A stretch of DNA of 64,000 nt, taken from Heptranchias perlo (Eukaryota). How positions within the stretch are numbered: the first letter of the stretch is position 1; each line of letters starts with the position of its first letter. The DNA lies in NCBI RefSeq assembly GCF_035084215.1, contig NC_090359.1, positions 24,242,001 through 24,306,000 of the forward strand. Reading direction: 5' to 3'. This document shows, piece after piece, positions 25,406 to 63,795 of this stretch. The translations under genes and the position numbers were made by a program. The notes beneath the pieces were generated by a model. It did no database searches. It was not told where the DNA came from and was given only the letters and a program-made list of their open reading frames with translations.

Positions 25406-25524
25406 AGTAACAGTAAATAATGGCATGGCTCCTGAAACCTGGTGACTGAGAGGAGAGCTGTGCACAAGATGGTAAACAGTGTGGAAAGGGCAAATCTCAA
25501 ACTAAAGCAAGACAAGGGGCTACC

Positions 25525-26032
25525 CTACTCTAGGAAGGATAACAAGGCCTTGGAGAGGGTGCAGAGGAGATTTACCAGAATGGTGCCAGGGATGAGGGAC
25601 TTTAGTTATGTGGAGAGACTGGAGAAGCTGGGGTTGTTCTCCTTAGAGCAGAGAAGGTTAAGGGGAGATTTAATAGAGGTGTTCAAAATTATGAGAGAGG
25701 TTTTGATAGAGTAGATAAGGGAGAAACAGTTACGACTGGCAGGAGGGTCGGTAACCAGGGGACACAGATTTAAAATAATTGGCAAAAAAGCCAGGGTGGG
25801 AGATGAGGAGAATTTTTTTTTTACGCAGCGAGTTGTAATGATCTGGAATTCACTGCCTGAAAGGGCGGTGGAAGCAGATTCAATAATAACTTTCAAAAGG
25901 TGAATTGGAGAAATACTTGAAAAGGAAAAATTTGCAGGGCTCTGGGGCAAGAGCAGGGGGAGTGGGACTAATTGGATCGTTCTTTCAGAGAGCTGGCACA
26001 GGCCAAATGGCCTCCCAATGTGCTGTATGATT
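25525..26032 (+). mobile_element. CR1 LINE 3' fragment
   Basis: ALERVQRRFTRMVPGMRDFSYVERLEKLGLFSLEQRRLRGDLIEVFKIM plus 3' UTR. Confidence 0.92.
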
Positions 26033-27790: not shown

Positions 27791-27854
27791 GCAGAAAGTC
27801 AAGGCACCATCTCCTGCCTCTTTACTGACCTCGTGTGAACTGTTCAGAAACCCG

Positions 27855-27928
27855 TCAGCTGAAGAAGGGAACGAGAGCCAGGCCTGCGATCAGGAGCATG
27901 CTGGGGAGAGTCGTAATCTCAGCAGCAT
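27855..27928 (-). CDS. Last coding exon of IgV gene C: GPI-anchor-like C-terminal signal (exon continues to a donor at 27830)
   Basis: Strong acceptor (T-rich tract + tctgttctgcag|), phase 1, DAAEITTLPSMLLIAGLALVPFFS*; donor GAG|gtcagt 25 nt after the stop. Confidence 0.75.
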
Positions 27929-28309
27929 CTGCAGAACAGAAAAAAACAAAATGGAATATTAGTTTCCGTCTCACCCCCGTCCCTCAAAATATAATCTCCC
28001 CTCCCCCAGTCTGGAACTCCCTCCCCACAGGTTGTCCACCAGACTATTGACACCCAAAGGCTGGCCGCGGTCGGTGGAATGGGGGGGCACGTGATGAAGG
28101 AGGGGGGACACAGGGGGAAGGAGGGGACACGGGGTGAAGGAGGGGGGGACACGGGGTGAAGGAGGGGGGGACACGGGGTGAAGGAGGGGGAACATGCTCA
28201 TGTTTTAAAAGTCTCTGCTTCTGTTTCCCACGAGGTCCATTCACTGCATCACTCTGCGATCTGCTGAACCAACCAATTGAAAGGGGGCCTAGTCTTTCTC
28301 GGGCTGAGT

Positions 28310-29212
28310 GTGAGGGAGCGAGTGAGAGAGGGAGGGAGAGGAGAGGAGAGAGAGAAAGAGGGAGGAGAGAGAGAAAGAGAGACAGGTGGGAGAGAAAGAG
28401 ACNNNNNNNNNNNNNNNNNNNNNNNNNNNNNNNNNNNNNNNNNNNNNNNNNNNNNNNNNNNNNNNNNNNNNNNNNNNNNNNNNNNNNNNNNNNNNNNNNN
28501 NNNNNNNNNNNNNNNNNNNNNNNNNNNNNNNNNNNNNNNNNNNNNNNNNNNNNNNNNNNNNNNNNNNNNNNNNNAGAGAGAAAGAGGGAGGAGAGAGAGA
28601 AAGAGGGAGGAGAGAGAGAAAGGGAGACAGGTGGGAGAGAAAGAGACAGGAGAGAGAAAGAGGGAGGAGAGAGAGAAAGAGGGGGGCGAGAGAGAAAGAG
28701 AGACAGGAGAGAGAGAAAGAGAGACAGGAGAGAGAGAAAGAGACAGGAGAGAGAAAGAGACAGGAGAGAGAAAGAGGGAGGAGAGAGAGAAAGAGAGACA
28801 GGAGAGAGAGAAAGAGACAGGAGAGAGAAAGAGGGAGGAGGGAGAGGAGAGGAGAGAGAGAAAGAGGGAGGAGAGAGAGAAAGGGAGACAGGGGAGTGAG
28901 AGAGGANNNNNNNNNNNNNNNNNNNNNNNNNNNNNNNNNNNNNNNNNNNNNNNNNNNNNNNNNNNNNNNNNNNNNNNNNNNNNNNNNNNNNNNNNNNNNN
29001 NNNNNNNNNNNNNNNNNNNNNNNNNNNNNNNNNNNNNNAGGAGAGAGAGAAAGAGGGAGGAGGGAGAGGAGAGGAGAGAGAGAAAGAGGGAGGAGAGAGA
29101 GAAAGAGGGAGGAGAGAGAGAAAGGGAGACAGGAGAGTGAGAGAGAGACAGGAGAGTAGAGAGAGGGGAGAAGAGGGAGGTGATGGAGAGAGTGAGGGAG
29201 GGAGGGAGGGGA
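28310..29212. repeat. GA-rich microsatellite containing two assembly gaps (N 28403-28574, 28907-29038)
   Basis: Purine tract of gagagagaaagag/agacagg units interrupted by N runs. Confidence 0.9.
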
Positions 29213-29873
29213 GCAATATCTGTATCTGTCCCTCAAACCGTGCCTTAGGCTCAGGTAAAGTCTAACAGGGAGCTGAGTTGCCGGGGCCTCCTCACTGCCG
29301 GTCGGTCACTGCCTCTCCCAGGCCCTCGGTTAGCAGCACTGGTTCTGTGATCCTGACCGCAGGTTATCTTGCCCACCAGTCCCGGCTCAGAGTGACCCTC
29401 TCTGAGTGTCCTCCCTTCTCCCAGCTTTAAAGCAACACTTCTTGTGCTCTGAACCTCAGTCCACTCCCTCGGGCGGACCAGCCGTGGGGCGACGGTGCCT
29501 CCTGCTGCAGCAGTGACCCGGGAAAGACCCTGGTTCAAACCCCGGCCTGAACTGAGCAAGCTGATGTCGGCTGTGGTGCTACGATGGTCCGCAGCCCCCC
29601 CACCCCGGCAGCGGGAAGAGGAAGACTGACCGCTTCCCAATGGGCTCCCCAAATCCCCCCCCCCCCCGTCCCCTCCCTCCCTCCGCCCGCCAGCCACTCC
29701 CTCCCTCCGCCAGCTGGATGTTGAGGAACATGATGCGATGCCCCCCACAGTCGAACAGCCCGCCACCACTCACTGCCGCAGCCGCTTGGCCGAGGCTCCG
29801 GGAGGGCCCGCCGGCACGCTGCGCCTCCGCGGCCCGGCAGCAGCCGAGGAAGGGCGCCAACGGAAACCCTCAC

Positions 29874-30242
29874 CTGTGGCGACACTCAGCGTGACGGCGG
29901 CACAGTTCTCTGAGTTGTGAGGCCGTTGAGTGACGATGTGGCATTCGTAGGTCCCAGTGTCGCGCACCGACACTCCCGTCAGGTTCAGCGCCGCGTCTCT
30001 CCTCTCAAACCAATCGGCCGCCAAGGCGGTGCGTCCCACGAACTCGCTGCCCTGGTTTTTGTTCTCCGTTTTTCGGTCCCTCGTGTGGACTACCAGAGGG
30101 TCACCCCCTTTCACCTCCTTTTTCCAAACCACCCTGCACACCTCGGGAGAGGGGCCCGTCCAGTTGAAACTGCACGGCAAGAAGACGGAGCCTCCATTCG
30201 TCACCGTCAACTCATCCGCCTGGCGCGTGCACTGGAGGGAAT
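29874..30242 (-). CDS. Ig V-set exon of gene C, B7/butyrophilin-like
   Basis: Acceptor cttcacttgttccag|, donor ACAG|gtgagg, 369 nt, phase 1-1; GGSVFLPCSF...VVWKKE...QGSEFVGRTAL..D..ERRDAALNLTGVSVRDTGTYEC with canonical C-W-DxGxYxC. Confidence 0.92.
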
Positions 30243-30258
30243 CTGGAACAAGTGAAGG

Positions 30259-33200
30259 CACACTCGCGGTTACAGAGAGCTCAGGCTCAGCTCGCACACG
30301 CTCACACTCAGCTCACACACACTCACACTCAGGGTTACTGAGAGCTCACACACTCACACTCAGGGTTACTGAGAGCTCACGCACTCAGCTGACTCACAAT
30401 CACACTCAGGGTTACTGGGAGCTCACACACTCAGCTCAAACACACTCACACTCGCAGTTACAGAGAGCTCAGACTCAGCTCACACACACTCACACTCGTG
30501 GTTATGGAGAGCTCAGACTCAGCTCACGCACACTCACACTCAGGGTTACTGAGAGCTCACACACCCAGCTCACATTCAGGGTTACTGGGAGCTCACACAC
30601 TCAGCTCATACACACTCACACTCGCAGTTACAGAGAGCTCAGACTCAGCTCACACACACTCACACTCGTGGTTACGGAGAGCTCAGACTCAGCTCACGCA
30701 CACTCACACTCAGGGTTACTGAGAGCTCACACACTCAGCTCACATTCAGGGTCACTGGGAGCTCACACACTCAGCTCACACACACTCACACTCACAGTTA
30801 CAGAGAGCTCAGACTCAGCTCACACACACTCACACTCGTGGTTACGGAGAGCTCAGACTCAGCTCATACACACTCACACTCGTGGTTACGGAGAGCTCAG
30901 ACTCAGCTCATACACACTCACACTCAGGGTTACTGAGAGCTCTCACACTCAGCTCACAAACACTCACACTCAGGGTTACTGAGAGCGCACACACTCAGCT
31001 CACACACACTCACACTCAGGGTTACTGAGAGCTCACACACACAGCTCACACACACTCACACTCAGGGTTACTGAGAGCTCACACACTCAACTCACACTCA
31101 GGAGTACTGAGAGCTCACACACTCAGCTCTCACACACTCGCACTCAGGGTTACTGAGAGCTTACACACTCAGCTCACACACTCAGCTCACATTCAGGGTT
31201 ACTGGGAGCTCACACACTCAGCTCCCACACACTCACACTCATGGTTACTGAGAGGTCACACACTCTCACAATCAGGGTTACTGAGAGCTCGCACACTCAG
31301 CTCACACACACTCATACTCAGAGTTGCTGAGAGCCCACACACTCAGCTCACTCACACTCACACTCAGGGTTACTGAGAGCACACACACTCAGCTCACACA
31401 CACTCACACTCAGGGTTACTGAGAGCTCACACACTCACACTCAGGGTTACTGGGAGCACACACTCTCAGCTCACACACACTCACACTCAGGGTTACTGAG
31501 AGCTCACACACTCAGCTCACATTCAGGGTTACTGGGAGCTCACACTCTCAGCTCACACACACTCACACTTTGAGTTACTGAGAGCCCACACACTCAGCTC
31601 ACTCACACTCACACTCAGGGTTACTGAGAGCACACACACTCAGCTCACTCACACTCACACTCAGGGTTACTGAGAGCTCACACACTCACACTCAGGGTTA
31701 CTGAGAGCACACACACTCAGCTCACACACACTCACACTCATGGTTGCTGAGAGGTCACACACTCTCACAATCAGGGTTACTGAGAGCTCGCACACTCAGC
31801 TCACTCACACTCACACTCAGGGTTATTGTTAGCTCACACACTCAGCTCACTCACACTCCTATTCAGGGTTACTGAGAGCTCACACACTTTCACACTTAGG
31901 GTTACTGAGAGCTCACACACTCAGCTCACACACGCTCACAATCAGAGTTACTGAGAGCTCACACACTCAGCTCACAAACACTCACACTCAGGGTTACTGA
32001 GAGCGCACACACTCAGCTCACACACACTCACACTCAGGGTTACTGAGAGCTCACACACTCAGCTCACATTCAGGGTTACTGGGAGCTCACACACTCAGCT
32101 CACTCACACTCACACTCAGGGATACTGAGAGCTCACACACTCACACTCAGGGCTACTGAGAGCTCACATACTCACACTCAGGGCTACTGAGAGCTCACAC
32201 ACTCAGCTCATACACACTCACAATCTGGGTTACTGAGAGCTCACACACTCAGCTCACTCACACTAACACTCAGGGATACTGAGAGCTCACACACTCACAC
32301 TCAGGGCTACTGAGAGCTCACATACTCACACTCAGGGCTACTGAGAGCTCACACACTCAGCTCTCACACACTCACAATCTGGGTTACTGAGAGCTCACAC
32401 ACACAGCTCACATTCAGGGTTACTGGGAGCTCACACACGCGGCTCCCACACACTCACACTCATGGTTACTGAGAGGTCACACACTCCCACACTCAGGGTT
32501 ACTGAGAGCTCGCACACTCAGCTCACACACACTCACACTCAGGGTTACTGAGAGCTCACACACTCAGCTCCCACACTCTCACACTCATGGTTACAGAGAG
32601 GTCACACTCTCACACTCAGGGTTACTGAGAGCTCGCACACTCAGCTCACTCACACTCACACTCAGGGTTACTGAGAGCTCACACACTCAGCTCACAAACA
32701 CACACTCAGGGTTACTGTGCGCTCACACACTCAGCTCACAAACACTCACACTCAGGGTTACTGAGAGCTCACACACTCAGCTCACTCACACTCAGGGTGA
32801 CTGAGAGCACATACACTCAGCTCACACACACTCACACTCGGGGTTACTGAGAGCTCACACTCTCAGCTCACACACACTCACACTCAGGGTTACTGAGAGC
32901 TCACACACTCAGCTCACATTCAGGGTTACTGGGAGCACACACTCTCAGCTCACACACACTCACACTCAGGGTTACTGAGAGCTCACACACTCAGCTCACA
33001 CACACACACTCAGGGTGACTGAGAGCTCACACACTCAGCTCCCACACAATCGCACTCAGGGTTACTGAGAGCTCACACACTCAGCTCACAAACACTCACA
33101 CTCAGGGTGACTGAGAGCTCACACACTCAGCTCACAAACACTCACACTTATGGTTACTGTGAGCTGACACACTCAGCTCACAAACACTCATACTCAGGGT

Positions 33201-36200
33201 TACTGAGAGCTCACACACTCAGCTCACACACACTCACACTCAGGGTTACTGAGAGCTCACACACTCAGCTCCCACACAATCGCACTCAGGGTTACTGAGA
33301 GCTCACACACTCAGCTCACAAACACTCACACTCAGGGTTACTGAGAGCTCACACACTCAGCTCACAAACACTCACACTCATGGTTACTGTGAGCTGACAC
33401 ACTCAGCTCACAAACACTCATACTCAGGGTTACTGAGAGCTCACACACTCAGCTCACACACACTCACACTCAGGGTTACTGAGTGCTCACACACTCAGCT
33501 CACACACACTCACACTCAGGGTTACTGCGTCCTCACACACTCAGCTCACACACACTCACACTCAGGGTTACTGAGAGCTCTCACACTCAGCTCACACACA
33601 CTCATACTCAGGGTTACTGAGTGCTCACACACTCATCTCCCACACACTCACACTCAGGGTTACTGCGTCCTCACACACTCAGCTCACAAACACTCACACT
33701 CAGGGTTACTGAGTGCTCACACACTCAGCTCCCACACACTCACACTCAGGATTACTGGGAGCTCACACACTCTCACACTCGGGGTTACTGAGAGCTCACA
33801 CCCTCAGCTCACTCACACTCACACTCTGGGTTACTGAGAGCTCACACATTCTCACACTCAGGGTTACTGAGAGCTCACGCACTCAGCTCACGCACACACA
33901 TACAGGGTTACTGAGCGCTCGCACACTCAGCTGCCTCACACTCACACTCAGGGTTATTTAGAGTTCACACACTTAGCTCACATTCAGGGTTACTGGGAGC
34001 TCACACACTCAGCTCACACACGCTCACACTCAGGGTTACTGAGTGCTCACAACATCTCACACTCAGGGTTACTGAGAGCTTACACACTCAGCTCACACAC
34101 ACTCACACTCAGGGTGACTGAGAGCTCACACACTCACCTCACAAACACTCACACTCAGGATTACTGAGTGCTCACACACTCAGCTCCCACACTCTCACAC
34201 TCATGGTTACAGAGAGGTCACACTCTCACACTCAGGGTTACTGAGAGCTCGCACACTCAGCTCACTCACACTCACACTCAGGGTTACTGAGAGCTCACAC
34301 ACTCAGCTCACTCACACTCCTATTCAGGGTCACTGAGAGCTCACACACTCAGCTCACAAACACTCACACTCAGGGTTACTGAGAGCTCACACACTCAGCT
34401 CACACACACACACTCAGGGTTACTGTGCGCTCACACACTCAGCTCACAAACACTCACACTCAGGGTTACTGAGAGCTCACACACTCAGCTCACTCACACT
34501 CAGGGTGACTGAGAGCACATACACTCAGCTCACACACACTCACACTCAGGGTTACTGAGAGCTCACACTCTCAGCTCACACACACTCACACTCAGGGTTA
34601 CTGAGAGCTCACACACTCAGCTCACATTCAGGGTTACTGGGAGCACACACTCTCAGCTCACACACACTCACACTCAGGGTTACTGAGAGCTCACACACTC
34701 AGCTCACACACACACACTCAGGGTTACTGAGAGCTCACACACTCAGCTCCCACACAATCGCACTCAGGGTTACTGAGAGCTCACACACTCAGCTCACAAA
34801 CACTCACACTCAGGGTTACTGAGAGCTCACACACTCAGCTCACAAACACTCACACTCATGGTTACTGTGAGCTGACACACTCAGCTCACAAACACTCATA
34901 CTCAGGGTTACTGAGAGCTCACACACTCAGCTCACGCACACTCACACTCAGGGTTACTGAGAGCTCACACACTCAGCTCACAAACACTCACACTCAGGGT
35001 TACTGAGAGCTCACACACTCAGCTCACAAACACTCACACTCATGGTTACTGTGAGCTGACACACTCAGCTCACAAACACTCATACTCAGGGTTACTGAGA
35101 GCTCACACACTCAGCTCACACACACTCACACTCAGGGTTACTGAGTGCTCACACACTCAGCTCACACACACTCACACTCAGGGTTACTGAGTGCTCACAC
35201 ACTCAGCTCACACACACTCACACTCAGGGTTACTGTGTCCTCACACACTCAGCTCACACACACTCACACTCAGGGTTACTGAGAGCTCTCACACTCAGCT
35301 CACACACACACTCATACTCAGGGTTACTGAGTGCTCACACACTCATCTCCCACACACTCACACTCAGGGTTACTGCGTCCTCACACACTCAGCTCACAAA
35401 CACTCACACTCAGGGTTACTGAGTGCTCACACACTCAGCTCCCACACACTCACACTCAGGATTACTGGGAGCTCACACGCTCTCACACTCGGGGTTACTG
35501 AGAGCTCACACCCTCAGCTCACTCACACTCACACTCTGGGTTACTGAGAGCTCACACATTCTCACACTCAGGGTTACTAAGAGCTCACGCACTCAGCTCA
35601 CGCACACACATACAGTGTTACTGAGCGCTCGCACACTCAGCTGCCTCACACTCACACTCAGGGTTATTTAGAGTTCACACACTTAGCTCACATTCAGGGT
35701 TACTGGGAGCTCACACACTCAGCTCACACACGCTCACACTCAGGGTTACTGAGTGCTCACAACATCTCACACTCAGGGTTACTGAGAGCTTACACACTCA
35801 GCTCACACACACTCACACTCAGGGTTACTGTGCGCTCACACACTCAGCTCACAAACACTCACACTCAGGATTACTGAGTGCTCACACACTCAGCTCCCAC
35901 ACTCTCACACTCATGGTTACAGAGAGGTCACACTCTCACACTCAGGGTTACTGAGAGCTCGCACACTCAGCTCACTCACACTCACACTCAGGGTTACTGA
36001 GAGCTCACACACTCAGCTCACTCACACTCCTATTCAGGGTCACTGAGAGCTCACACACTCAGCTCACAAACACTCACACTCAGGGTTACTGAGAGCTCAC
36101 ACACTCAGCTCACTCACACTCAGGGTGACTGAGAGCACATACACTCAGCTCACACACACTCACACTCAGGGTTACTGAGAGCTCACACTCTCAGCTCACA

Positions 36201-39200
36201 CACACTCACACTCAGGGTTACTGAGAGCTCACACACTCAGCTCACATTCAGGGTTACTGGGAGCACACACTCTCAGCTCACACACACTCACACTCAGGGT
36301 TACTGAGAGCTCACACACTCAGCTCACACACACACACTCAGGGTTACTGAGAGCTCACACACTCAGCTCCCACACAATCGCACTCAGGGTTACTGAGAGC
36401 TCACACACTCAGCTCACAAACACTCACACTCAGGGTTACTGAGAGCTCACACACTCAGCTCACAAACACTCACACTCATGGTTACTGTGAGCTGACACAC
36501 TCAGCTCACAAACACTCATACTCAGGGTTACTGAGAGCTCACACACTCAGCTCACGCACACTCACACTCAGGGTTACTGAGAGCTCACACACTCAGCTCA
36601 CAAACACTCACACTCAGGGTTACTGAGAGCTCACACACTCAGCTCACAAACACTCACACTCATGGTTACTGTGAGCTGACACACTCAGCTCACAAACACT
36701 CATACTCAGGGTTACTGAGAGCTCACACACTCAGCTCACACACACTCACACTCAGGGTTACTGAGTGCTCACACACTCAGCTCACACACACTCACACTCA
36801 GGGTTACTGTGTCCTCACACACTCAGCTCACACACACTCACACTCAGGGTTACTGAGAGCTCTCACACTCAGCTCACACACACTCATACTCAGGGTTACT
36901 GAGTGCTCACACACTCATCTCCCACACACTCACACTCAGGGTTATTGCGTCCTCACACACTCAGCTCACAAACACTCACACTCAGGGTTACTGAGTGCTC
37001 ACACACTCAGCTCCCACACACTCACACTCAGGATTACTGGGAGCTCACACACTCTCACACTCGGGGTTACTGAGAGCTCACACCCTCAGCTCACTCACAC
37101 TCACACTCTGGGTTACTGAGAGCTCACACATTCTCACACTCAGGGTTACTGAGAGCTCACGCACTCAGCTCACGCACACACATACAGGGTTACTGAGCGC
37201 TCGCACACTCAGCTGCCTCACACTCACACTCAGGGTTATTTAGAGTTCACACACTTAGCTCACATTCAGGGTTACTGGGAGCTCACACACTCAGCTCACA
37301 CACGCTCACACTCAGGGTTACTGAGTGCTCACAACATCTCACACTCAGGGTTACTGAGAGCTTACACACTCAGCTCACACACACTCACACTCAGGGTTAC
37401 TGAGAGCTCACACACTCACCTCACAAACACTCACACTCAGGATTACTGAGTGCTCACACACTCAGCTCCCACACTCTCACACTCATGGTTACAGAGAGGT
37501 CACACTCTCACACTCAGGGTTACTGGGAGCACACACTCTCAGCTCACACACACTCACACTCAGGGTTACTGAGAGCTCACACACTCAGCTCACACACACA
37601 CACTCAGGGTTACTGAGAGCTCACACACTCAGCTCCCACACAATCGCACTCAGGGTTACTGAGAGCTCACACACTCAGCTCACAAACACTCACACTCAGG
37701 GTTACTGAGAGCTCACACACTCAGCTCACAAACACTCACACTTATGGTTACTGTGAGCTGACACACTCAGCTCACAAACACTCATACTCAGGGTTACTGA
37801 GAGCTCACACACTCAGCTCACACACACTCACACTCAGGGTTACTGAGAGCTCACACACTCAGCTCCCACACAATCGCACTCAGGGCTACTGAGAGCTCAC
37901 ACACTCAGCTCACAAACACTCACACTCAGGGTTACTGAGAGCTCACACACTCAGCTCACAAACACTCACACTCATGGTTACTGTGAGCTGACACACTCAG
38001 CTCACAAACACTCATACTCAGGGTTACTGAGAGCTCACACACTCAGCTCACACACACTCACACTCAGGGTTACTGAGTGCTCACACACTCAGCTCACACA
38101 CACTCACACTCAGGGTTACTGCGTCCTCACACACTCAGCTCACACACACTCACACTCAGGGTTACTGAGAGCTCTCACACTCAGCTCACACACACTCATA
38201 CTCAGGGTTACTGAGTGCTCACACACTCATCTCCCACACACTCACACTCAGGGTTACTGCGTCCTCACACACTCAGCTCACAAACACTCACACTCAGGGT
38301 TACTGAGTGCTCACACACTCAGCTCCCACACACTCACACTCAGGATTACTGGGAGCTCACACACTCTCACACTCGGGGTTACTGAGAGCTCACACCCTCA
38401 GCTCACTCACACTCACACTCTGGGTTACTGAGAGCTCACACATTCTCACACTCAGGGTTACTGAGAGCTCACGCACTCAGCTCACGCACACACATACAGG
38501 GTTACTGAGCGCTCGCACACTCAGCTGCCTCACACTCACACTCAGGGTTATTTAGAGTTCACACACTTAGCTCACATTCAGGGTTACTGGGAGCTCACAC
38601 ACTCAGCTCACACACGCTCACACTCAGGGTTACTGAGTGCTCACAACATCTCACACTCAGGGTTACTGAGAGCTTACACACTCAGCTCACACACACTCAC
38701 ACTCAGGGTTACTGTGCGCTCACACACTCAGCTCACAAACACTCACACTCAGGATTACTGAGTGCTCACACACTCAGCTCCCACACTCTCACACTCATGG
38801 TTACAGAGAGGTCACACTCTCACACTCAGGGTTACTGAGAGCTCGCACACTCAGCTCACTCACACTCACACTCAGGGTTACTGAGAGCTCACACACTCAG
38901 CTCACTCACACTCCTATTCAGGGTCACTGAGAGCTCACACACTCAGCTCACAAACACTCACACTCAGGGTTACTGAGAGCTCACACACTCAGCTCACACA
39001 CACACACTCAGGGTTACTGTGCGCTCACACACTCAGCTCACAAACACTCTAACTCAGGGTTACTGAGAGCTCACACACTCAGCTCACTCACACTCAGGGT
39101 GACTGAGAGCACATACACTCAGCTCACACACACTCACACTCAGGGTTACTGAGAGCTCACACTCTCAGCTCACACACACTCACACTCAGGGTTACTGAGA

Positions 39201-42200: not shown

Positions 42201-45200
42201 TACTGAGAGCTCACACACTCAGCTCACAAACACTCACACTCATGGTTACTGTGAGCTGACACACTCAGCTCACAAACACTCATACTCAGGGTTACTGAGA
42301 GCTCACACACTCAGCTCACACACACTCACACTCAGGGTTACTGAGTGCTCACACACTCAGCTCACACACACTCACACTCAGGGTTACTGCGTCCTCACAC
42401 ACTCAGCTCACACACACTCACACTCAGGGTTACTGAGAGCTCTCACACTCAGCTCACACACACTCATACTCAGGGTTACTGAGTGCTCACACACTCATCT
42501 CCCACACACTCACACTCAGGGTTACTGCGTCCTCACACACTCAGCTCACAAACACTCACACTCAGGGTTACTGAGTGCTCACACACTCAGCTCCCACACA
42601 CTCACACTCAGGATTACTGGGAGCTCACACACTCTCACACTCGGGGTTACTGAGAGCTCACACCCTCAGCTCACTCACACTCACACTCTGGGTTACTGAG
42701 AGCTCACACATTCTCACACTCAGGGTTACTGAGAGCTCACGCACTCAGCTCACGCACACACATACAGGGTTACTGAGCGCTCGCACACTCAGCTGCCTCA
42801 CACTCACACTCAGGGTTATTTAGAGTTCACACACTTAGCTCACATTCAGGGTTACTGGGAGCTCACACACTCAGCTCACACACGCTCACACTCAGGGTTA
42901 CTGAGTGCTCACAACATCTCACACTCAGGGTTACTGAGAGCTTACACACTCAGCTCACACACACTCACACTCAGGGTTACTGTGCGCTCACACACTCAGC
43001 TCACAAACACTCACACTCAGGATTACTGAGTGCTCACACACTCAGCTCCCACACTCTCACACTCATGGTTACAGAGAGGTCACACTCTCACACTCAGGGT
43101 TACTGAGATCTCGCACACTCAGCTCACTCACACTCACACTCGGGGTTACTGAGAGCTCACACACTCAGCTCACTCACACTCCTATTCAGGGTCACTGAGA
43201 GCTCACACACTCAGCTCACAAACACTCACACTCAGGGTTACTGAGAGCTCACACACTCAGCTCACACACACACACTCAGGGTTACTGTGCGCTCACACAC
43301 TCAGCTCACAAACACTCACACTCAGGGTTACTGAGAGCTCACACACTCAGCTCACTCACACTCAGGGTGACTGAGAGCACATACACTCAGCTCACACACA
43401 CTCACACTCAGGGTTACTGAGAGCTCACACTCTCAGCTCACACACACTCACACTCAGGGTTACTGAGAGCTCACACACTCAGCTCACATTCAGGGTTACT
43501 GGGAGCACACACTCTCAGCTCACACACACTCACACTCAGGGTTACTGAGAGCTCACACACTCAGCTCACACACACACACTCAGGGTTACTGAGAGCTCAC
43601 ACACTCAGCTCCAACACAATCGCACTCAGGGTTACTGAGAGCTCACACACTCAGCTCACAAACACTCACACTCAGGGTTACTGAGAGCTCACACACTCAG
43701 CTCACACACACACACTCAGGGTTACTGTGCGCTCACACACTCAGCTCACAAACACTCTAACTCAGGGTTACTGAGAGCTCACACACTCAGCTCACTCACA
43801 CTCAGGGTGACTGAGAGCACATACACTCAGCTCACACACACTCACACTCAGGGTTACTGAGAGCTCACACTCTCAGCTCACACACACTCACACTCAGGGT
43901 TACTGAGAGCTCACACACTCAGCTCACATTCAGGGTTACTGGGAGCACACACTCTCAGCTCACACACACTCACACTCAGGGTTACTGAGAGCTCACACAC
44001 TCAGCTCACACACACACACTCAGGGTTACTGAGAGCTCACACACTCAGCTCCCACACAATCGCACTCAGGGTTACTGAGAGCTCACACACTCAGCTCACA
44101 AACACTCACACTCAGGGTTACTGAGAGCTCACACACTCAGCTCACAAACACTCACACTCATGGTTACTGTGAGCTGACACACTCAGCTCACAAACACTCA
44201 TACTCAGGGTTACTGAGAGCTCACACACTCAGCTCACACACACTCACACTCAGGGTTACTGAGTGCTCACACACTCAGCTCACACACACTCACACTCAGG
44301 GTTACTGTGTCCTCACACACTCAGCTCACACACACTCACACTCAGGGTTACTGAGAGCTCTCACACTCAGCTCACACACACTCATACTCAGGGTTACTGA
44401 GTGCTCACACACTCATCTCCCACACACTCACACTCAGGGTTACTGCGTCCTCACACACTCAGCTCACAAACACTCACACTCAGGGTTACTGAGTGCTCAC
44501 ACACTCAGCTCCCACACACTCACACTCAGGATTACTGGGAGCTCACACACTCTCACACTCGGGGTTACTGAGAGCTCACACCCTCAGCTCACTCACACTC
44601 ACACTCTGGGTTACTGAGAGCTCACACATTCTCACACTCAGGGTTACTGAGAGCTCACGCACTCAGCTCACGCACACACATACAGGGTTACTGAGCGCTC
44701 GCACACTCAGCTGCCTCACACTCACACTCAGGGTTATTTAGAGTTCACACACTTAGCTCACATTCAGGGTTACTGGGAGCTCACACACTCAGCTCACACA
44801 CGCTCACACTCAGGGTTACTGAGTGCTCACAACATCTCACACTCAGGGTTACTGAGAGCTTACACACTCAGCTCACACACACTCACACTCAGGGTTACTG
44901 AGAGCTCACACACTCACCTCACAAACACTCACACTCAGGATTACTGAGTGCTCACACACTCAGCTCCCACACTCTCACACTCATGGTTGCAGAGAGGTCA
45001 CACTCTCACACTCAGGGTTACTGGGAGCACACACTCTCAGCTCACACACACTCACACTCAGGGTTACTGAGAGCTCACACACTCAGCTCACACACACACA
45101 CTCAGGGTTACTGAGAGCTCACACACTCAGCTCCCACACAATCGCACTCAGGGTTACTGAGAGCTCACACACTCAGCTCACAAACACTCACACTCAGGGT

Positions 45201-48200
45201 TACTGAGAGCTCACACACTCAGCTCACAAACACTCACACTTATGGTTACTGTGAGCTGACACACTCAGCTCACAAACACTCATACTCAGGGTTACTGAGA
45301 GCTCACACACTCAGCTCACACACACTCACACTCAGGGTTACTGAGAGCTCACACACTCAGCTCCCACACAATCGCACTCAGGGCTACTGAGAGCTCACAC
45401 ACTCAGCTCACAAACACTCACACTCAGGGTTACTGAGAGCTCACACACTCAGCTCACAAACACTCACACTCATGGTTACTGTGAGCTGACACACTCAGCT
45501 CACAAACACTCATACTCAGGGTTACTGAGAGCTCACACACTCAGCTCACACACACTCACACTCAGGGTTACTGAGTGCTCACACACTCAGCTCACACACA
45601 CTCACACTCAGGGTTACTGCGTCCTCACACACTCAGCTCACACACACTCACACTCAGGGTTACTGAGAGCTCTCACACTCAGCTCACACACACTCATACT
45701 CAGGGTTACTGAGTGCTCACACACTCATCTCCCACACACTCACACTCAGGGTTACTGCGTCCTCACACACTCAGCTCACAAACACTCACACTCAGGGTTA
45801 CTGAGTGCTCACACACTCAGCTCCCACACACTCACACTCAGGATTACTGGGAGCTCACACACTCTCACACTCGGGGTTACTGAGAGCTCACACCCTCAGC
45901 TCACTCACACTCACACTCTGGGTTACTGAGAGCTCACACATTCTCACACTCAGGGTTACTGAGAGCTCACGCACTCAGCTCACGCACACACATACAGGGT
46001 TACTGAGCGCTCGCACACTCAGCTGCCTCACACTCACACTCAGGGTTATTTAGAGTTCACACACTTAGCTCACATTCAGGGTTACTGGGAGCTCACACAC
46101 TCAGCTCACACACGCTCACACTCAGGGTTACTGAGTGCTCACAACATCTCACACTCAGGGTTACTGAGAGCTTACACACTCAGCTCACACACACTCACAC
46201 TCAGGGTTACTGTGCGCTCACACACTCAGCTCACAAACACTCACACTCAGGATTACTGAGTGCTCACACACTCAGCTCCCACACTCTCACACTCATGGTT
46301 ACAGAGAGGTCACACTCTCACACTCAGGGTTACTGAGATCTCGCACACTCAGCTCACTCACACTCACACTCGGGGTTACTGAGAGCTCACACACTCAGCT
46401 CACTCACACTCCTATTCAGGGTCACTGAGAGCTCACACACTCAGCTCACAAACACTCACACTCAGGGTTACTGAGAGCTCACACACTCAGCTCACACACA
46501 CACACTCAGGGTTACTGTGCGCTCACACACTCAGCTCACAAACACTCACACTCAGGGTTACTGAGAGCTCACACACTCAGCTCACTCACACTCAGGGTGA
46601 CTGAGAGCACATACACTCAGCTCACACACACTCACACTCAGGGTTACTGAGAGCTCACACTCTCAGCTCACACACACTCACACTCAGGGTTACTGAGAGC
46701 TCACACACTCAGCTCACATTCAGGGTTACTGGGAGCACACACTCTCAGCTCACACACACTCACACTCAGGGTTACTGAGAGCTCACACACTCAGCTCACA
46801 CACACACACTCAGGGTTACTGAGAGCTCACACACTCAGCTCCAACACAATCGCACTCAGGGTTACTGAGAGCTCACACACTCAGCTCACAAACACTCACA
46901 CTCAGGGTTACTGAGAGCTCACACACTCAGCTCACAAACACTCACACTCATGGTTACTGTGAGCTGACACACTCAGCTCACAAACACTCATACTCAGGGT
47001 TACTGAGAGCTCACACACTCAGCTCACGCACACTCACACTCAGGGTTACTGAGAGCTCACACACTCAGCTCACAAACACTCACACTCAGGGTTACTGAGA
47101 GCTTACACACTCAGCTCACAAACACTCACACTCATGGTTACTGTGAGCTGACACACTCAGCTCACAAACACTCATACTCAGGGTTACTGAGAGCTCACAC
47201 ACTCAGCTCACACACACTCACACTCAGGGTTACTGAGTGCTCACACACTCAGCTCACACACACTCACACTCAGGGTTACTGTGTCCTCACACACTCAGCT
47301 CACACACACTCACACTCAGGGTTACTGAGAGCTCTCACACTCAGCTCACACACACTCATACTCAGGGTTACTGAGTGCTCACACACTCATCTCCCACACA
47401 CTCACACTCAGGGTTACTGCGTCCTCACACACTCAGCTCACAAACACTCACACTCAGGGTTACTGAGTGCTCACACACTCAGCTCCCACACACTCACACT
47501 CAGGATTACTGGGAGCTCACACATTCTCACACTCGGGGTTACTGAGAGCTCACACCCTCAGCTCACTCACACTCACACTCTGGGTTACTGAGAGCTCACA
47601 CATTCTCACACTCAGGGTTACTGAGAGCTCACGCACTCAGCTCACGCACACACATACAGGGTTACTGAGCGCTCGCACACTCAGCTGCCTCACACTCACA
47701 CTCAGGGTTATTTAGAGTTCACACACTTAGCTCACATTCAGGGTTACTGGGAGCTCACACACTCAGCTCACACACGCTCACACTCAGGGTTACTGAGTGC
47801 TCACAACATCTCACACTCAGGGTTACTGAGAGCTTACACACTCAGCTCACACACACTCACACTCAGGGTTACTGTGCGCTCACACACTCAGCTCACAAAC
47901 ACTCACACTCAGGGTTACTGAGAGCTCGCACACTCAGCTCACTCACACTCACACTCAGGGTTACTGAGAGCTCACACACTCAGCTCACTCACACTCCTAT
48001 TCAGGGTCACTGAGAGCTCACACACTCAGCTCACAAACACTCACACTCAGGGTTACTGAGAGCTCACACACTCAGCTCACACACACACACTCAGGGTTAC
48101 TGTGCGCTCACACACTCAGCTCACAAACACTCACACTCAGGGTTACTGAGAGCTCACACACTCAGCTCACTCACACTCAGGGTGACTGAGAGCACATACA

Positions 48201-50055
48201 CTCAGCTCACACACACTCACACTCAGGGTTACTGAGAGCTCACACTCTCAGCTCACACACACTCACACTCAGGGTTACTGAGAGCTCACACACTCAGCTC
48301 ACATTCAGGGTTACTGGGAGCACACACTCTCAGCTCACACACACTCACACTCAGGGTTACTGAGAGCTCACACACTCAGCTCACACACACACACTCAGGG
48401 TTACTGAGAGCTCACACACTCAGCTCCAACACAATCGCACTCAGGGTTACTGAGAGCTCACACACTCAGCTCACAAACACTCACACTCAGGGTTACTGAG
48501 AGCTCACACACTCAGCTCACAAACACTCACACTCATGGTTACTGTGAGCTGACACACTCAGCTCACAAACACTCATACTCAGTGTTACTGAGAGCTCACA
48601 CACTCAGCTCACGCACACTCACACTCAGGGTTACTGAGAGCTCACACACTCAGCTCACAAACACTCACACTCAGGGTTACTGAGAGCTCACACACTCAGC
48701 TCACAAACACTCACACTCATGGTTACTGTGAGCTGACACACTCAGCTCACAAACACTCATACTCAGGGTTACTGAGAGCTCACACACTCAGCTCACACAC
48801 ACTCACACTCAGGGTTACTGAGTGCTCACACACTCAGCTCACACACACTCACACTCAGGGTTACTGTGTCCTCACACACTCAGCTCACACACACTCACAC
48901 TCAGGGTTACTGAGAGCTCTCACACTCAGCTCACACACACTCATACTCGGGGTTACTGAGTGCTCACACACTCATCTCCCACACACTCACACTCAGGGTT
49001 ACTGCGTCCTCACACACTCAGCTCACAAACACTCACACTCAGGGTTACTGAGTGCTCACACACTCAGCTCCCACACACTCACACTCAGGATTACTGGGAG
49101 CTCACACATTCTCACACTCGGGGTTACTGAGAGCTCACACCCTCAGCTCACTCACACTCACACTCTGGGTTACTGAGAGCTCACACATTCTCACACTCAG
49201 GGTTACTGAGAGCTCACGCACTCAGCTCACGCACACACATACAGGGTTACTGAGCGCTCGCACACTCAGCTGCCTCACACTCACACTCAGGGTTATTTAG
49301 AGTTCACACACTTAGCTCACATTCAGGGTTACTGGGAGCTCACACACTCAGCTCACACACGCTCACACTCAGGGTTACTGAGTGCTCACAACATCTCACA
49401 CTCAGGGTTACTGAGAGCTTACACACTCAGCTCACACACACTCACACTCAGGGTTACTGAGAGCTCACACACTCACCTCACAAACACTCACACTCAGGAT
49501 TACTGAGTGCTCACACACTCAGCTCCCACACTCTCACACTCATGGTTACAGAGAGGTCACACTCTCACACTCAGGGTTACTGAGAGCTCGCACACTCAGC
49601 TCACTCACACTCGTACTCAGGGTTACTGAGAGCTCACACACTGAGCTCTCACACACTCACACTCAGGGTTACTGAGAGTACACACACTCAGCTCTCACAC
49701 ACTCGTACTGAGGGTTACTGAGAGCTCACACACTCATCTCTCACACACTCACACTCAGGGTTACTGAGAGCTCACACACTTAGCTCTCACACACTCACAC
49801 TCAGGGTTACTGAGAGCTCACACACTCAGCTCTCACACACTCACACTCAGGGTTACTGAGAGCTCACACACTCAGCTCTCACACACTCACACTCAGGGTT
49901 ACTGAGAGCTCACACACTCAGCTCTCACACACTCACACTCAGGGTTACTGAGAGCTCACACACTCAGCTCTCACACACTCACACTCAGGGTTATTGAGAG
50001 CTCACACACTCAGCTCTCACACACTCACACTCAGGGTTACTGAGAGCTCACACAC
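30259..50055. repeat. ~19.8-kb satellite, ~46-bp monomer with 1.3-1.9-kb higher-order repeats
   Basis: Monomer cagggttactgagagctcacacactcagctcacacacactcacact with shorter variants; a near-identical 249-bp variant block recurs 11 times between 33713 and 49052. Confidence 0.97.
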
Positions 50056-50099
50056 GTTGCTCCATGAGATGGATAGAAAAGTAAAAGAAAAAGTAAAAA

Positions 50100-50420
50100 A
50101 GGAAAGACTTTCACAACCTCAGGACGTCCTAAAACGCTTTACAGCCAATGAAGTACTTTTGAAGTGTAGTTACTGTTGTGATGTAGGAAACGTGGCAACC
50201 AATTTACGCACAGCAAGATCCCACAAACAGCAATGAGATAAATGACCAGATAATCCGTCTTAGTGATGTTTGTTGAGGGATAAATATCGGCCCAGGACAC
50301 CGGGGAGAACTCCCCCTGCTCTTCTTCGAAATAGTGGCCGTGGGATCTTTTACGTCCACCTGAGAGGGCAGATGGGGGCCTCGGTTTAACGTCTCATCCG
50401 AAAGACGGCACCTCCCGACT
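50100..50420 (-). mobile_element. DeuSINE (SacSINE1-like)
   Basis: Reverse complement of the Deu domain and tail (tgggatcttttacgtccacctgagaggg..cctcggtttaacgtctcatccgaaagacggcacctcc). Confidence 0.88.
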
Positions 50421-50741
50421 GCAGCGGTGGCAAGGGAACGGAGTTAATGGCCGGGGGCTGAAGTCGACGGATCCGGCCTTCCCAATATTTAACAGGAGGA
50501 AATTGTGAGTGGATATCGGGCGAGCAGTCTGACAACACAGCGGGGTCAAGAGAGGTGGTGGGAGAGATAGCAATGGGGGGGCCATCAGTGTGGAAGCTCT
50601 TTTGGGGTTTATCTCGGCCTTTTTAAGAGTGTCTCGGCAATTTGATTTGGGCCTGTTTCAGCTATTTTGGGGTTCACGTTGGCAGTCACCCCCTCTCTAG
50701 GCTGGCGCCTGCTCGGCAGTCGTTCAGCTGGCACCTTCAGG

Positions 50742-51112
50742 CAGGGGTTGCCAACTCTGGTTGGCCGTATTCCAGGAGGTTTCATCACGTGACCTCCTGC
50801 CTCCGACTGCCCCGAGACTCCCGCTGTTGGTTGCCCGAAACATCCTTCCTCCTGGCGTCCTGCCTACCCACAGCCAATTGGAAGGCGAAAAGACCCTTCA
50901 ATTACCCAATTGGATGACTCGTGACTGTCAGTCAAACAGCCTTTTATCCCCATCTCCAAATATTTTTATAATTTGCGCGCAAAGAAAATGAAAAACATTT
51001 TTTTCCCCCATTGAATGACCCAATGCTTTTTCTCTCCCTGTGTTGTTCGCACCAGATATCAAGCTTCAATTTCTGGAGACTTCAGGCCAATCCTGGAGGG
51101 TTGGGAACCCTA
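50742..51112 (+). mobile_element. hAT-type MITE, copy 2, with 8-bp target-site duplication
   Basis: TIRs caggggttgccaac ... gttgggaacccta; flanking direct repeat ccttcagg at 50734-50741 and 51113-51120. Confidence 0.85.
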
Positions 51113-51168
51113 CCTTCAGGAAGGCGATCGCAGACGAAGGAGTGTGTAAATCTGATGGAAACACTTAC

Positions 51169-51232
51169 TCTTTGCCGAGGTGAGAGTGACTATCATCAGT
51201 AGCACAAGCAACAAGACCCTCCCGACAGCCAT
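51169..51232 (-). CDS. Signal-peptide exon of gene C (full exon 51169-51254 including 5' UTR)
   Basis: Acceptor gtgtttttccgacag|, good Kozak gaactATGG, MAVGRVLLLVLLMIVTLTSAK plus a phase-1 donor A|gtaagt, compatible with the V exon at 30242. Confidence 0.82.
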
Positions 51233-51339
51233 AGTTCCAACTTCAGCAACGGACCTGTCGGAAAAACACAAGGAACATGAACTTGATTCAACCATTGCCA
51301 TTTGGACCAGCTGCACCTGGTAGACATTGAATCCAGTAC

Positions 51340-52155
51340 ATAAGAACATAAGAAATAGGAGCAGGAGTAGGCCAATCGGCCCCTCGAGCCTGCTTTGCCA
51401 TTCAATAAGATCATGGCTGATCTGATCCTAACCTCAAATCTAAATTCATGTCCAATTTCCTGCCCGCTCCCCGTAACCCCTAATTCCCTTTACTTCTAGG
51501 AAACTGTCTATTTCTGTTTTAAATTTATTTAATGATGTAGCTTCCACAGCTTCCTGGAGCAGCAAATTCCACAGACCTACTACCCTCTGAGTGAAGAAGT
51601 TTCTCCTCATCTCAGTTTTGAAAGAGCAGCCCCTTATTCTAAGATTATGCCCCCTAGTTCTAGTTTCACCCATCCTTGGGAACATCCTTACCGCATCCAC
51701 CCGATCAAGCCGCTCCACAATCTTATATGTTTCAATAAGATCGCCTCTCATTCTTCTGAACTCCAATGAGTAGAGTCCCAATCTACTCAACCTCTCCTCA
51801 TATGTCCACCCCCTCATCCCCGGGATTAACCGAGTGAACCTTCTTTGTACTGCCTCGAGAGCAAGTATGTCTTTTCTTAAGTATGGAGACCAAAACTGTA
51901 TGCAGTATTGCAGGTGCGGTCTCACCAATACCTTATATAACTGCAGCAATACCTCCCTGTTTTTATATTCTATCCCCCCAGCAATAAAAGCCAACATTCC
52001 GTTGGCCTTCTTGATCACCTGCTGCACCTGCATACTAACTTTTTGATTTTCTTGCACCAGGACCCCCAGATCCCTTTGTACTGCAGTACTTTCCAGTTTC
52101 TCGCCATTAAGATAATAACTTGCTCTCTGATTTTTCCTGCCAAAGTGCATAAAAA
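51340..52155 (-). mobile_element. CR1 LINE 3' fragment (second subfamily, frame still open)
   Basis: ORF 51446-52168: RDLGVLV...KANGMLAFI...LYKVLVRPHLQYC..FWSPYLRKDILALEAVQRRFTRLIPG...RRMRGDLIETYKI. Confidence 0.95.
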
Positions 52156-52244
52156 AGTACAGAGCCATCTAGAGCACGGGCTGAGCACTTTTGTGTGTGT
52201 GTGTGTGTGTGTGTTTGTACGTGTGTGTGTTTGCATATGTGCAG

Positions 52245-63244: not shown

Positions 63245-63795
63245 ATCATAGAATTATACGGCGCGGAAGGGAGGCCATTCGGCCCCTCGTGCCTGTGCCG
63301 GCTCTTTGAGAGAACTATCCAATTAGTCCCACTCCCCCCTGCTCTTTCCGCATGGCCCTGCAAATTTTGCCTTTTCAAATATTTATCCAATTCCCTTTGA
63401 AAGCAAAGATTGAATCTGCTTCCACCGCCCTTTCAGGCAGAGCATTCCAGATTGTTAATAGTTTCTCCCTATCTACTCTATCAAAGCCCCTGATAGTTTC
63501 GAACACCTCTATTAAATCTCCCCTTAACCTTCTCTGCTTTAAGGAGAACAACCCCAGCTTCTCCAGTCTCTCCACGTAACTGAAGTCCCTCATCCCTGGT
63601 ACCATTCTAGTAAATCTCCTCTGCACCCTCTCCGAGGCCTTGACATCCTTCCTAAAGTGCGGTGCCCAGAATTGGACACAATACTCCAGCTGGGGTCTAA
63701 CCAGTGATTTATAAAGGTTTAGCATAACTCCCTTGCTTTTGTGCTCCATGCATCTATTTATAAAGCTCAGAATCCCTTATTAACAGCCTTATTGA
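63245..63795 (-). mobile_element. CR1 LINE 3' fragment with internal deletion
   Basis: ORF 63375-63749 LYKSLVRPQLEYCVQFWAPHFRKDV..ERVQRRFTRMVPG; joins REKLL directly to TIWNALPE. Confidence 0.92.

What the first reader, a model, noticed from the sequence alone, without database searches (positions are those of the whole stretch)
27830..51254. Hidden intact gene for a probable GPI-anchored, single-IgV, B7/butyrophilin-like protein (gene C)
Seen: three minus-strand exons with consensus splice sites and matching phase-1 junctions (51169-51232, 29874-30242, 27855-27928) join into a stop-free 168-aa product. It reads MAVGRVLLLVLLMIVTLTSAK-NSLQCTRQ...V domain...VTLSVAT-DAAEITTLPSMLLIAGLALVPFFS*. 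Knowledge: the Q-x-x-x-F/Y-x-GRT-x-L ... AAL ... V-x-x-x-D-x-G-x-Y-x-C signature resembles B7/butyrophilin/MOG V domains, which are normally type-I membrane proteins, usually with an added C-type domain. Small residues (D-A-A), a short polar spacer and a terminal hydrophobic stretch with no cytoplasmic tail form the standard GPI-signal layout. Inference: a Thy-1-like architecture built on a B7/BTN-type domain, possibly a ligand or decoy, next to PILR/Siglec-like receptor genes. I do not recognise it as a named gene, and no single ORF in the track shows it.
Basis: partly seen in the sequence, partly recalled or inferred. Interest (0 to 1): 0.8.

Follow-up and report, generated by a model that had tools for sequence, protein, structure and literature searches.

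The report
Small shark B7-like surface protein gene
This is a real three-exon shark gene for a small cell-surface protein with one antibody-like domain and a probable lipid (GPI) anchor; public databases already predict it, but nobody has studied it.

Summary
They have GT/AG splice sites and matching phase 1. Both assembly gaps lie inside intron 2 and touch no exon.

The gene is not hidden. RefSeq already holds exactly this 168-aa product as XP_067828258.1, "V-set domain-containing T-cell activation inhibitor 1-like", from Heptranchias perlo.

All 6 elasmobranch models that a profile search returned, three sharks and three rays, share the leader, the single V domain and the tail. The D-A/T-A start of the tail and four cysteines never vary.

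The domain is V-set (Pfam E 1.7e-12). Its best solved relatives by sequence are CD276 and VTCN1, but only narrowly ahead of MXRA8, pIgR and JAML. By fold it is a generic V domain.

The tail fits the GPI-signal layout by my own crude rules. I had no GPI predictor and no experiment.

Four paper searches found nothing on this gene. The scan noted a similar single-IgV, GPI-type gene about 0.5 Mb away in the same genome (s1-882487).

Verdict: a real, conserved, uncharacterised member of a known kind, of moderate interest.

The parts
51169..51232 (-). Coding part of exon 1: the ATG and a 21-codon signal peptide (MAVGRVLLLVLLMIVTLTSAK), plus the first base of a split codon. The donor is AAGA|GTAAGT.
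   Evidence: tblastn of P0001 residues 1-29 hits here. M1, R5, L8, L9, L11, L12, M13, A20 and K21 are invariant in 6 of 6 orthologues. Cleavage after T-S-A is my reading by the -3/-1 rule, not a tool result.
30243..51168 (-). Intron 1 (20.9 kb). Almost all of it is a 46-bp-unit minisatellite at 30347-50055.
   Evidence: Tandem Repeats Finder: period 46, 412.8 copies over 30347-49390; period 138 over 30724-50055. The ORF list shows only repeat-derived frames there.
29874..30242 (-). Exon 2: the whole V-set Ig domain in phase 1/1. It carries the canonical C45/W61/C122, a second conserved cysteine pair C26/C135, a species-specific C57, and the sequons N48-W-T and N108-L-T.
   Evidence: Pfam V-set E 1.7e-12, 47.9 bits against a cut-off of 26. 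100% identical to P0001 residues 23-144. AlphaFold2 mean pLDDT is 89.8.
27929..29873 (-). Intron 2 (1.9 kb). It holds both assembly gaps (28403-28574 and 28907-29038) and AG-rich simple repeats.
   Evidence: Three ORFs of this intron plus one that runs from it 7 nt into exon 3 had no Pfam match at E up to 0.1.
27855..27928 (-). Exon 3, coding part: the tail D-A-A-EITTLPS-MLLIAGLALVPFFS and the stop (TGA at 27855-27857). This is the candidate GPI-attachment signal, with D145 as the candidate attachment (omega) residue.
   Evidence: tblastn of the whale-shark protein's tail hits here (E 4e-5). D145, A147, L157, G160, L161, F167 and S168 are invariant in 6 of 6 orthologues. Layout rule.

Best explanation
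This is an intact three-exon gene of the sharpnose sevengill shark (Heptranchias perlo). RefSeq already predicts it as XP_067828258.1. It belongs to an elasmobranch-wide orthologue group.

Shown here:
- The exons, splice sites and phases.
- A V-set domain whose sequence is closest to the V domains of the B7 members CD276 and VTCN1.
- The same leader, V domain and tail in three sharks and three rays.
- Four invariant cysteines.

Inferred:
- The leader is cut after Ala20.
- The V domain folds with the canonical C45-C122 bond and a second bond, C26-C135, that ties the A and G strands.
- The C-terminal 23 residues are removed by the GPI transamidase at Asp145. That leaves a glycoprotein of about 125 residues held in the outer leaflet by a GPI anchor.
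- Like B7-type V domains, it would act as a surface ligand or co-ligand for a receptor on another cell. That receptor is unknown.
For: Exons, sites and phase.

An identical 168-aa public protein with an accession.

V-set domain at E 1.7e-12.

Orthologues: a profile search gave 6 proteins at E up to 1e-10 out of 8,000 scored candidates, all elasmobranch and all with the same layout. 50 columns are invariant, among them D145, A147 and the four cysteines.

The orthologue clade has SH-aLRT 99, and the rays inside it have 100, which agrees with the species relationships.

All three full-length orthologues tested end with 0 residues after the hydrophobic run and have a D-A-A omega candidate with a 7-residue spacer and a 14-residue tail. 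The other three show the same ending in the alignment.

Few AG sites pass the tail rule: 5 of 5,206 on the minus strand and 0 of 5,458 on the plus strand.

Solved relatives by profile: CD276 first, and VTCN1 the best single-domain chain.

The protein atlas places it nearest to clusters named VTCN1, butyrophilin and HHLA2. Thy-1 clusters score 0.91. This is a lead only.

Precedent for a GPI link in the B7 family: passages in PMC9104196 say that B7-H4 has been proposed to be GPI-linked and that a C-terminal Flag tag is lost on expression.
Against: No RNA evidence.

All six orthologues are pipeline predictions. None of their clusters lists a transcript-assembly source.

The GPI call rests on my own crude rules, not on a trained predictor or an experiment.

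The uncharged run I149-S168 is 20 residues long and could span a membrane.

The tail is about as conserved as the V domain, which is more than I would expect of a signal that is thrown away (expectation from memory).

The B7 lead is narrow: VTCN1 40.1 bits, MXRA8 39.7, pIgR 39.4, JAML 38.6. Foldseek ranks CAR D1 first and B7-H4 15th.

The C26-C135 bond is inferred from conservation only. I had no model coordinates.
Confidence: 0.6

Rival explanations
1. The gene and product are the same, but the tail is not cleaved. The protein is a type I membrane protein held by a tail-less transmembrane helix (I149-S168) and has no GPI anchor.
For: The uncharged run is 20 residues long in P0001 and P0004 and 23 in P0024. 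AlphaFold2 draws a helix at 154-167. The tail sequence G-L-A/V...F-S is conserved between sharks and rays, which suits a retained membrane segment. A paralogue in the same genome (P0058) has a true transmembrane segment with a 28-residue cytoplasmic tail.
Against: No residue follows the hydrophobic run in any of the 6 orthologues, so there is no basic stop-transfer residue. The strongly hydrophobic core is only 14 residues, and no 19-residue window there reaches the mean hydropathy of 2.0 used. The invariant small D-A/T-A triplet sits at the spacing expected of an omega site.
Confidence: 0.2
2. The model is a gene-prediction artefact or an unexpressed relic. The V exon is real, but the leader or tail pairing is not used in vivo, or another 3' exon (one hidden in an assembly gap, or a soluble form) gives the real product.
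For: No spliced reads were seen. All supporting proteins are automatic predictions. Two gaps lie in intron 2. One related database fragment (P0021) leaves the shared sequence after the V domain and ends differently, and P0010 reads on past the donor. A 19.7-kb minisatellite sits in intron 1.
Against: Leader, V domain and tail are each conserved, and the frame is open in 6 of 6 species across the shark-ray split. The tree follows the species. The splice sites are strong. No alternative hydrophobic exon appears outside simple repeats. No second Ig exon was found in the window.
Confidence: 0.1
3. The V domain is not of the B7/butyrophilin type. It belongs to another V-set lineage (CTX/JAM/CAR, MXRA8, or sodium-channel beta/MPZ-like), and the B7-like names are best-hit artefacts.
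For: Foldseek ranks 1-8 and ranks 10, 11 and 13 are CAR D1, and sodium-channel beta-4 is rank 9. MXRA8, pIgR and JAML score within 2 bits of VTCN1. The automatic names given to relatives disagree with one another: VTCN1-like, CD276-like, MOG-like, ICOS-ligand-like.
Against: CD276 is first with both profiles. VTCN1 is the best single-domain chain, and PD-L1, MOG, ICOS-L, CD86 and BTNL8 all appear. The motif run VVH...Q...F.GRT...W...(N/D)A.L.L..V...D.G.Y.C aligns along CD276 V (alignment printed). The atlas's nearest named clusters are VTCN1, BTN1A1-like and HHLA2.
Confidence: 0.1

Closest known systems
VTCN1 / B7-H4
   Same: RefSeq names the protein after it. Its V domain (4gos) is the best single-domain solved match by profile: 52.0 bits and 40.1 bits. 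Foldseek gives 25% identity. B7-H4 also ends in a hydrophobic stretch and has been proposed to be GPI-linked (passages of PMC9104196).
   Different: B7-H4 has an IgV plus an IgC domain (from memory). This product has the V domain only and no second Ig exon was found. It also carries the extra conserved cysteine pair C26/C135. Nothing here shows orthology.
CD276 / B7-H3
   Same: Top hit of both profile searches against solved structures (E 1.7e-25, 7.3e-12). The alignment runs over most of the V domain, including the F.(G/N)RT and D.G.Y.C motifs.
   Different: CD276 is a V-C or V-C-V-C type I membrane protein. The high total score comes from two V domains of about 42 bits each.
Thy-1 (CD90)
   Same: Same build: signal peptide, one V-like Ig domain, C-terminal GPI signal, and a mature size near 110-125 residues (Thy-1 facts from memory). 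Atlas clusters named Thy-1 score 0.91 by language-model features.
   Different: None of my searches gave a sequence match to Thy-1. The V domain's sequence relatives are B7-type. The atlas score is a lead, not a test.
MOG (myelin-oligodendrocyte glycoprotein)
   Same: A single B7/BTN-type IgV ectodomain. It appears in the family-profile search (E 4.3e-11). Amphibian relatives of this family carry the automatic name MOG and have a V domain plus two hydrophobic segments.
   Different: MOG is membrane-spanning, not GPI-linked (from memory). It does not appear among the best 60 hits of the group-A profile.
Elasmobranch paralogue group B (e.g. XP_067828272.1 and XP_067828273.1 of H. perlo)
   Same: Same four-cysteine V domain at 33-38% identity. 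They lie on the same 29.8-Mb contig. Several members end in a hydrophobic C-terminus (P0051, P0068, P0151).
   Different: They have a long, low-complexity stalk of about 50-70 residues between the V domain and the tail. One copy (P0058) has a transmembrane segment and a cytoplasmic tail. They form a separate clade (SH-aLRT 98) that groups with salamander and caecilian proteins on a midpoint-rooted tree.

Membership tests
V-set immunoglobulin domain (Pfam PF07686) | A profile match above the curated cut-off | tested here: met
   E 1.7e-12, 47.9 bits against a cut-off of 26, over residues 8-111 of the 122-aa exon 2 translation.
V-set immunoglobulin domain (Pfam PF07686) | The canonical Cys...Trp...D-x-G-x-Y-x-C core and a beta-sandwich fold | tested here: met
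   C45, W61, D116, G118, Y120 and C122 are present. W61, G118 and C122 are invariant in 29 of 29 rows, and C45 is in 28 of the 28 rows that have a residue there. AlphaFold2 mean pLDDT is 89.8, with strands throughout residues 23-143.
B7 family (CD80/86, PD-L1/2, ICOSL, CD276, VTCN1, HHLA2) | The V domain is closest in sequence to B7 V domains | tested here: inconclusive
   CD276 and VTCN1 lead both profile searches, but MXRA8, pIgR and JAML are within about 2 bits of VTCN1. Foldseek ranks CAR D1 first. I could not build a tree with named B7 references.
B7 family (CD80/86, PD-L1/2, ICOSL, CD276, VTCN1, HHLA2) | An ectodomain of IgV followed by IgC | tested here: not met
   The 168-aa product has one Ig domain. 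tblastn with two-domain relatives found no second Ig exon in the window. The intron-2 ORFs have no Pfam match. The unread gaps cannot be checked.
B7 family (CD80/86, PD-L1/2, ICOSL, CD276, VTCN1, HHLA2) | Binds a CD28-family or other lymphocyte receptor | not testable with these tools
   This needs binding assays.
Butyrophilins | IgV-IgC-TM with, usually, a cytoplasmic B30.2 (PRY/SPRY) domain | tested here: not met
   The product ends 24 residues after the V domain. The definition of the family is from memory.
GPI-anchored proteins | An N-terminal signal peptide | tested here: met
   MAVGR followed by a 12-residue hydrophobic core and T-S-A. The leader is conserved in 6 of 6 orthologues. It was judged by the -3/-1 rule by eye; SignalP was not run.
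GPI-anchored proteins | A C-terminal signal: small omega and omega+2 residues, a polar spacer, and a hydrophobic end with no cytoplasmic residues | tested here: met
   D145-A-A, spacer EITTLPS, a 14-residue tail of mean hydropathy 2.3, and 0 residues after it. D is kept in 6 of 6 and A147 in 6 of 6. These are my own rules only; NetGPI, PredGPI and big-PI were not available.
GPI-anchored proteins | Cleavage and lipid attachment shown (PI-PLC release, loss of a C-terminal tag) | not testable with these tools
   This needs an experiment.
Thy-1 | Sequence homology to Thy-1 | not tested
   No Thy-1 sequence was available from a tool. The only pointer is an atlas feature score of 0.91 to clusters named Thy-1.

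The most novel reading that the evidence does not exclude
The elasmobranch group-A genes are the surviving GPI-anchored members of an old, undescribed B7-like V-domain lineage. The lineage is marked by a second cysteine pair (C26/C135) and a D-W-F motif. Sharks, rays, coelacanth and amphibians share it, and no amniote appeared among the relatives whose species I looked up. On this reading it split from its sister group before cartilaginous and bony vertebrates parted. Its product would be the surface ligand of one of the paired PILR/Siglec-like receptors encoded beside it.
Probability: 0.1. Interest if true: 0.6.

Novelty: new member of a known kind. Interest (0 to 1): 0.3.

Why it matters
B7-type ligands set thresholds for lymphocyte activation, and cartilaginous fish are the oldest living lineage with antibody- and T-cell-receptor-based immunity. 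A small, probably lipid-anchored B7-like protein kept from sevengill sharks to rays points to a conserved surface interaction whose receptor is unknown. If the GPI anchor and an immune expression pattern were confirmed, it would add a Thy-1-sized member to the B7-like repertoire and offer a tractable probe, as an Fc fusion, for finding its receptor in sharks.

The practical gain for the scan is smaller. The gene is already in RefSeq under an automatic name, so this is a correct reading of an annotated but unstudied gene, not a discovery of a missing one.

Tried and rejected

3. A second Ig (C-type) exon or another membrane exon. tblastn with 19 family proteins hit only exon 2, the tail, the leader and, weakly, the unrelated V exon near 10 kb. 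The hydropathy scan of 10.5-29.9 kb found only simple-repeat frames and short chance ORFs. Six ORFs had no Pfam match.

4. Fold search as a family test. It was uninformative, because every V-set family matches at E around 1e-7 to 1e-9.

5. A tree against named B7, BTN and CTX references. I did not do it. No tool gave me those sequences as stored proteins, and I did not type sequence from memory.

6. Disulfide geometry of C26/C135.

7. Literature. Four searches found nothing on this gene or on a GPI-anchored B7-like protein of sharks; I saw only titles and abstract starts. For PMC9104196 I read three passages. Supplementary files were not consulted.

8. Upstream in-frame ATGs at 51295, 51301 and 51349. 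I rejected them as starts. The N-terminal extensions of the whale-shark and stingray models are not conserved with each other, whereas the M-A...R-leader is.
Full report
**What is in the sequence**

Reading the minus strand directly confirms the three exons. Exon 1 (51169-51232) starts at an ATG and ends AAGA|GTAAGT. Exon 2 (29874-30242) follows CTTGTTCCAG and ends ACAG|GTGAGG. Exon 3 (27855-27928) follows a long pyrimidine tract and CAG, and it ends in TGA. The lengths of 64, 369 and 74 nt give phase 1 at both junctions, and each exon is open in that phase.

The window has N runs at 28403-28574, 28907-29038 and 54767-55087. The first two lie inside intron 2 and touch no exon. Continuity across them therefore does not affect the reading frame. 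An exon hidden in a gap cannot be excluded from this DNA alone.

Intron 1 is 20.9 kb. It is almost entirely a minisatellite with a 46-bp unit, about 413 copies over 30347-50055. Without the repeat, the leader would sit roughly 1.2 kb from the V exon.

**The gene is not hidden**

I searched the spliced model exon by exon and left the joined step out. Exon 2 alone returned one protein of 168 aa at 100% identity, 1 hit among 19 candidates. Its sequence equals leader plus V domain plus tail. It is RefSeq XP_067828258.1, [quoted passage not shown], on a 29.8-Mb contig.

The window is therefore from the sharpnose sevengill shark. tblastn of that protein back onto the window places its three parts on the three exons.

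**The domain**

Exon 2 is a V-set domain: Pfam E 1.7e-12, 47.9 bits against a cut-off of 26. AlphaFold2 with a 29-row alignment gave mean pLDDT 89.8 and pTM 0.76. The model is a beta sandwich over residues 23-143 with a C-terminal helix at 154-167 of lower confidence.

Foldseek against the PDB was not discriminating. CAR D1 came first (E 4.9e-9), sodium-channel beta-4 was rank 9, ICOS-L rank 12 and the B7-H4 V domain rank 15 at 25% identity.

By sequence profile the picture is clearer, but the margin is narrow.
- With the 13-row family profile, CD276 leads (E 1.7e-25, two V domains of about 42 bits each). JAML, MXRA8, VTCN1 (52.0 bits), mouse CD276, MOG, PD-L1, ICOS-L, CD86 and BTNL8 follow.
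- With the 6-row orthologue profile, CD276 leads again. VTCN1 (40.1 bits) is the best single-domain chain, and MXRA8 (39.7), pIgR (39.4) and JAML (38.6) are close behind.

The protein atlas's nearest named clusters are VTCN1, BTN1A1-like and HHLA2. Thy-1-named clusters score 0.91. These are leads only. "B7/butyrophilin-like" is thus the best-supported label, but it is not proven.

**Relatives**

The all-against-all HMMER search with exon 2 found 742 proteins at E up to 0.001, 173 at up to 1e-10 and 6 at up to 1e-30. From the 150 listed, I fetched 27 short or single-domain hits. I looked up names for 20 proteins in all, 17 of those 27 plus 3 multi-domain hits.

A profile of three orthologues then returned 6 proteins at E up to 1e-10 among 8,000 scored candidates:
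- Heptranchias perlo
- Cetorhinus maximus (also 168 aa)
- Rhincodon typus
- Hemitrygon akajei
- Hypanus sabinus
- Mobula hypostoma

All 6 show the same three parts. Fifty columns are invariant. They include M1, R5, A20 and K21 of the leader, C26, C45, W61, R92, T93, W99, F100, C122 and C135 of the domain, and D145, A147, L157, G160, L161, F167 and S168 of the tail.

I built a quick maximum-likelihood tree of the V domain from 30 rows. P0021 and P0037 were dropped as near-duplicates of P0004 and P0151. The tree gives the orthologue clade SH-aLRT 99 and the rays within it 100.

A second elasmobranch clade, group B, has support 98. It has a long stalk and includes two H. perlo genes on the same contig. 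One of these has a hydrophobic C-terminus (P0051) and one has a transmembrane segment with a 28-residue cytoplasmic tail (P0058).

More distant relatives are in coelacanth, frogs, salamanders and caecilians. Their automatic names disagree with one another: MOG, CD276-like, ICOS-ligand-like or uncharacterised.

The second cysteine pair is a family mark. C26 is present in 25 of the 26 rows that have a residue there, and C135 in 28 of 29. C57 occurs only in H. perlo, 1 of 6 orthologues.

**The tail**

The product ends D145-A-A, then EITTLPS, then MLLIAGLALVPFFS. My rule-of-thumb scan requires a small omega residue, a small omega+2 residue, a 7-residue spacer, and an uncharged hydrophobic end that reaches the C-terminus. 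It finds D-A-A as a candidate in all three full-length orthologues tested, with 0 residues after the hydrophobic run. The other three show the same ending in the alignment.

As a chance control, 5 of 5,206 minus-strand AG sites and 0 of 5,458 plus-strand AG sites give a phase-1 peptide that passes a comparable rule.

No 19-residue window of mean hydropathy 2.0 or more exists in this tail. The windows of that kind elsewhere in 10.5-29.9 kb lie in simple repeats or short chance ORFs.

From memory, placental alkaline phosphatase uses a D-A-A omega triplet. I did not check this with a tool. A GPI link has been proposed for B7-H4, and loss of a C-terminal Flag tag has been reported (three passages of PMC9104196).

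Against the GPI reading:
- The uncharged run is 20 residues long.
- AlphaFold2 draws a helix there.
- The tail is as conserved as the V domain.
- No trained predictor or experiment was available.

**Expression**

This could not be tested. Four runs of one sample hold exon 2, but none is on record as RNA. That stretch was kept out of all later searches.

All orthologue proteins come from NCBI or UniRef records. None of their clusters lists a transcript-assembly source. That is a weak negative.

**Literature**

Four full-text searches found no paper on this gene or on a GPI-anchored B7-like protein of cartilaginous fish. I saw only listings and abstract starts. They could hold gene lists of shark immune loci that I did not see.

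**Verdict**

The architecture and the B7-like reading hold at the sequence level and are conserved across elasmobranchs. The claim that the gene is hidden fails. The anchor, the expression and the function remain inferred.

My odds:
- About 0.85 that the gene and its product are real as modelled.
- About 0.6 for the whole explanation, including the GPI anchor.

The scan's own note s1-882487 reports a similar single-IgV gene with a GPI-type end about 505 kb beyond this window's end, in the same genome. That fits the group-B paralogue on the same contig, but I did not verify its place.

Noticed in passing
window 30347-50055: A minisatellite with a 46-bp unit, about 413 copies and 19.7 kb, fills intron 1 of the gene. 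Its true length in the animal may differ from the assembly.
   Followed up: partly
window 9777-10433 (-): An open frame that holds a second, unrelated V-set exon (Pfam V-set E 1.3e-7, Ig_CD22 E 6.6e-4). It is the PILR/Siglec-like domain noted elsewhere in the scan.
   Followed up: partly
window 4431-9888, 16611-18000 and 20412-21069: Three more long tandem-repeat blocks give long repeat-derived open frames (GERSVSVRDP-type, LPQPLYTLTRPFN-type and His-rich HHGHHQ-type), seen in the ORF lists.
   Followed up: no
window 51449-53652 (-), 11632-12276 (+), 25436-25711 (+), 63378-63776 (-): Open frames that look like reverse-transcriptase or LINE fragments sit just upstream of exon 1 and elsewhere. 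This was judged by eye, with no Pfam scan.
   Followed up: no
window 51295, 51301, 51349 (-): There are three in-frame ATGs upstream of the conserved start. The RefSeq models of whale shark and the two stingrays carry non-conserved N-terminal extensions of about 60-85 residues, which look like wrong start choices.
   Followed up: partly
P0001 residue 57 (window exon 2): A fifth cysteine occurs only in H. perlo among the six orthologues; the others have K, R, H or Q. It may be unpaired.
   Followed up: no
P0051 and P0058 (H. perlo, same 29.8-Mb contig): Two paralogues have nearly identical V domains. One ends in a hydrophobic C-terminus and the other has a transmembrane segment and a 28-residue cytoplasmic tail. 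Each has two accessions.
   Followed up: partly
P0050 and P0088 (Xenopus): Amphibian relatives have one V domain followed by two hydrophobic segments, a MOG-like topology.
   Followed up: no
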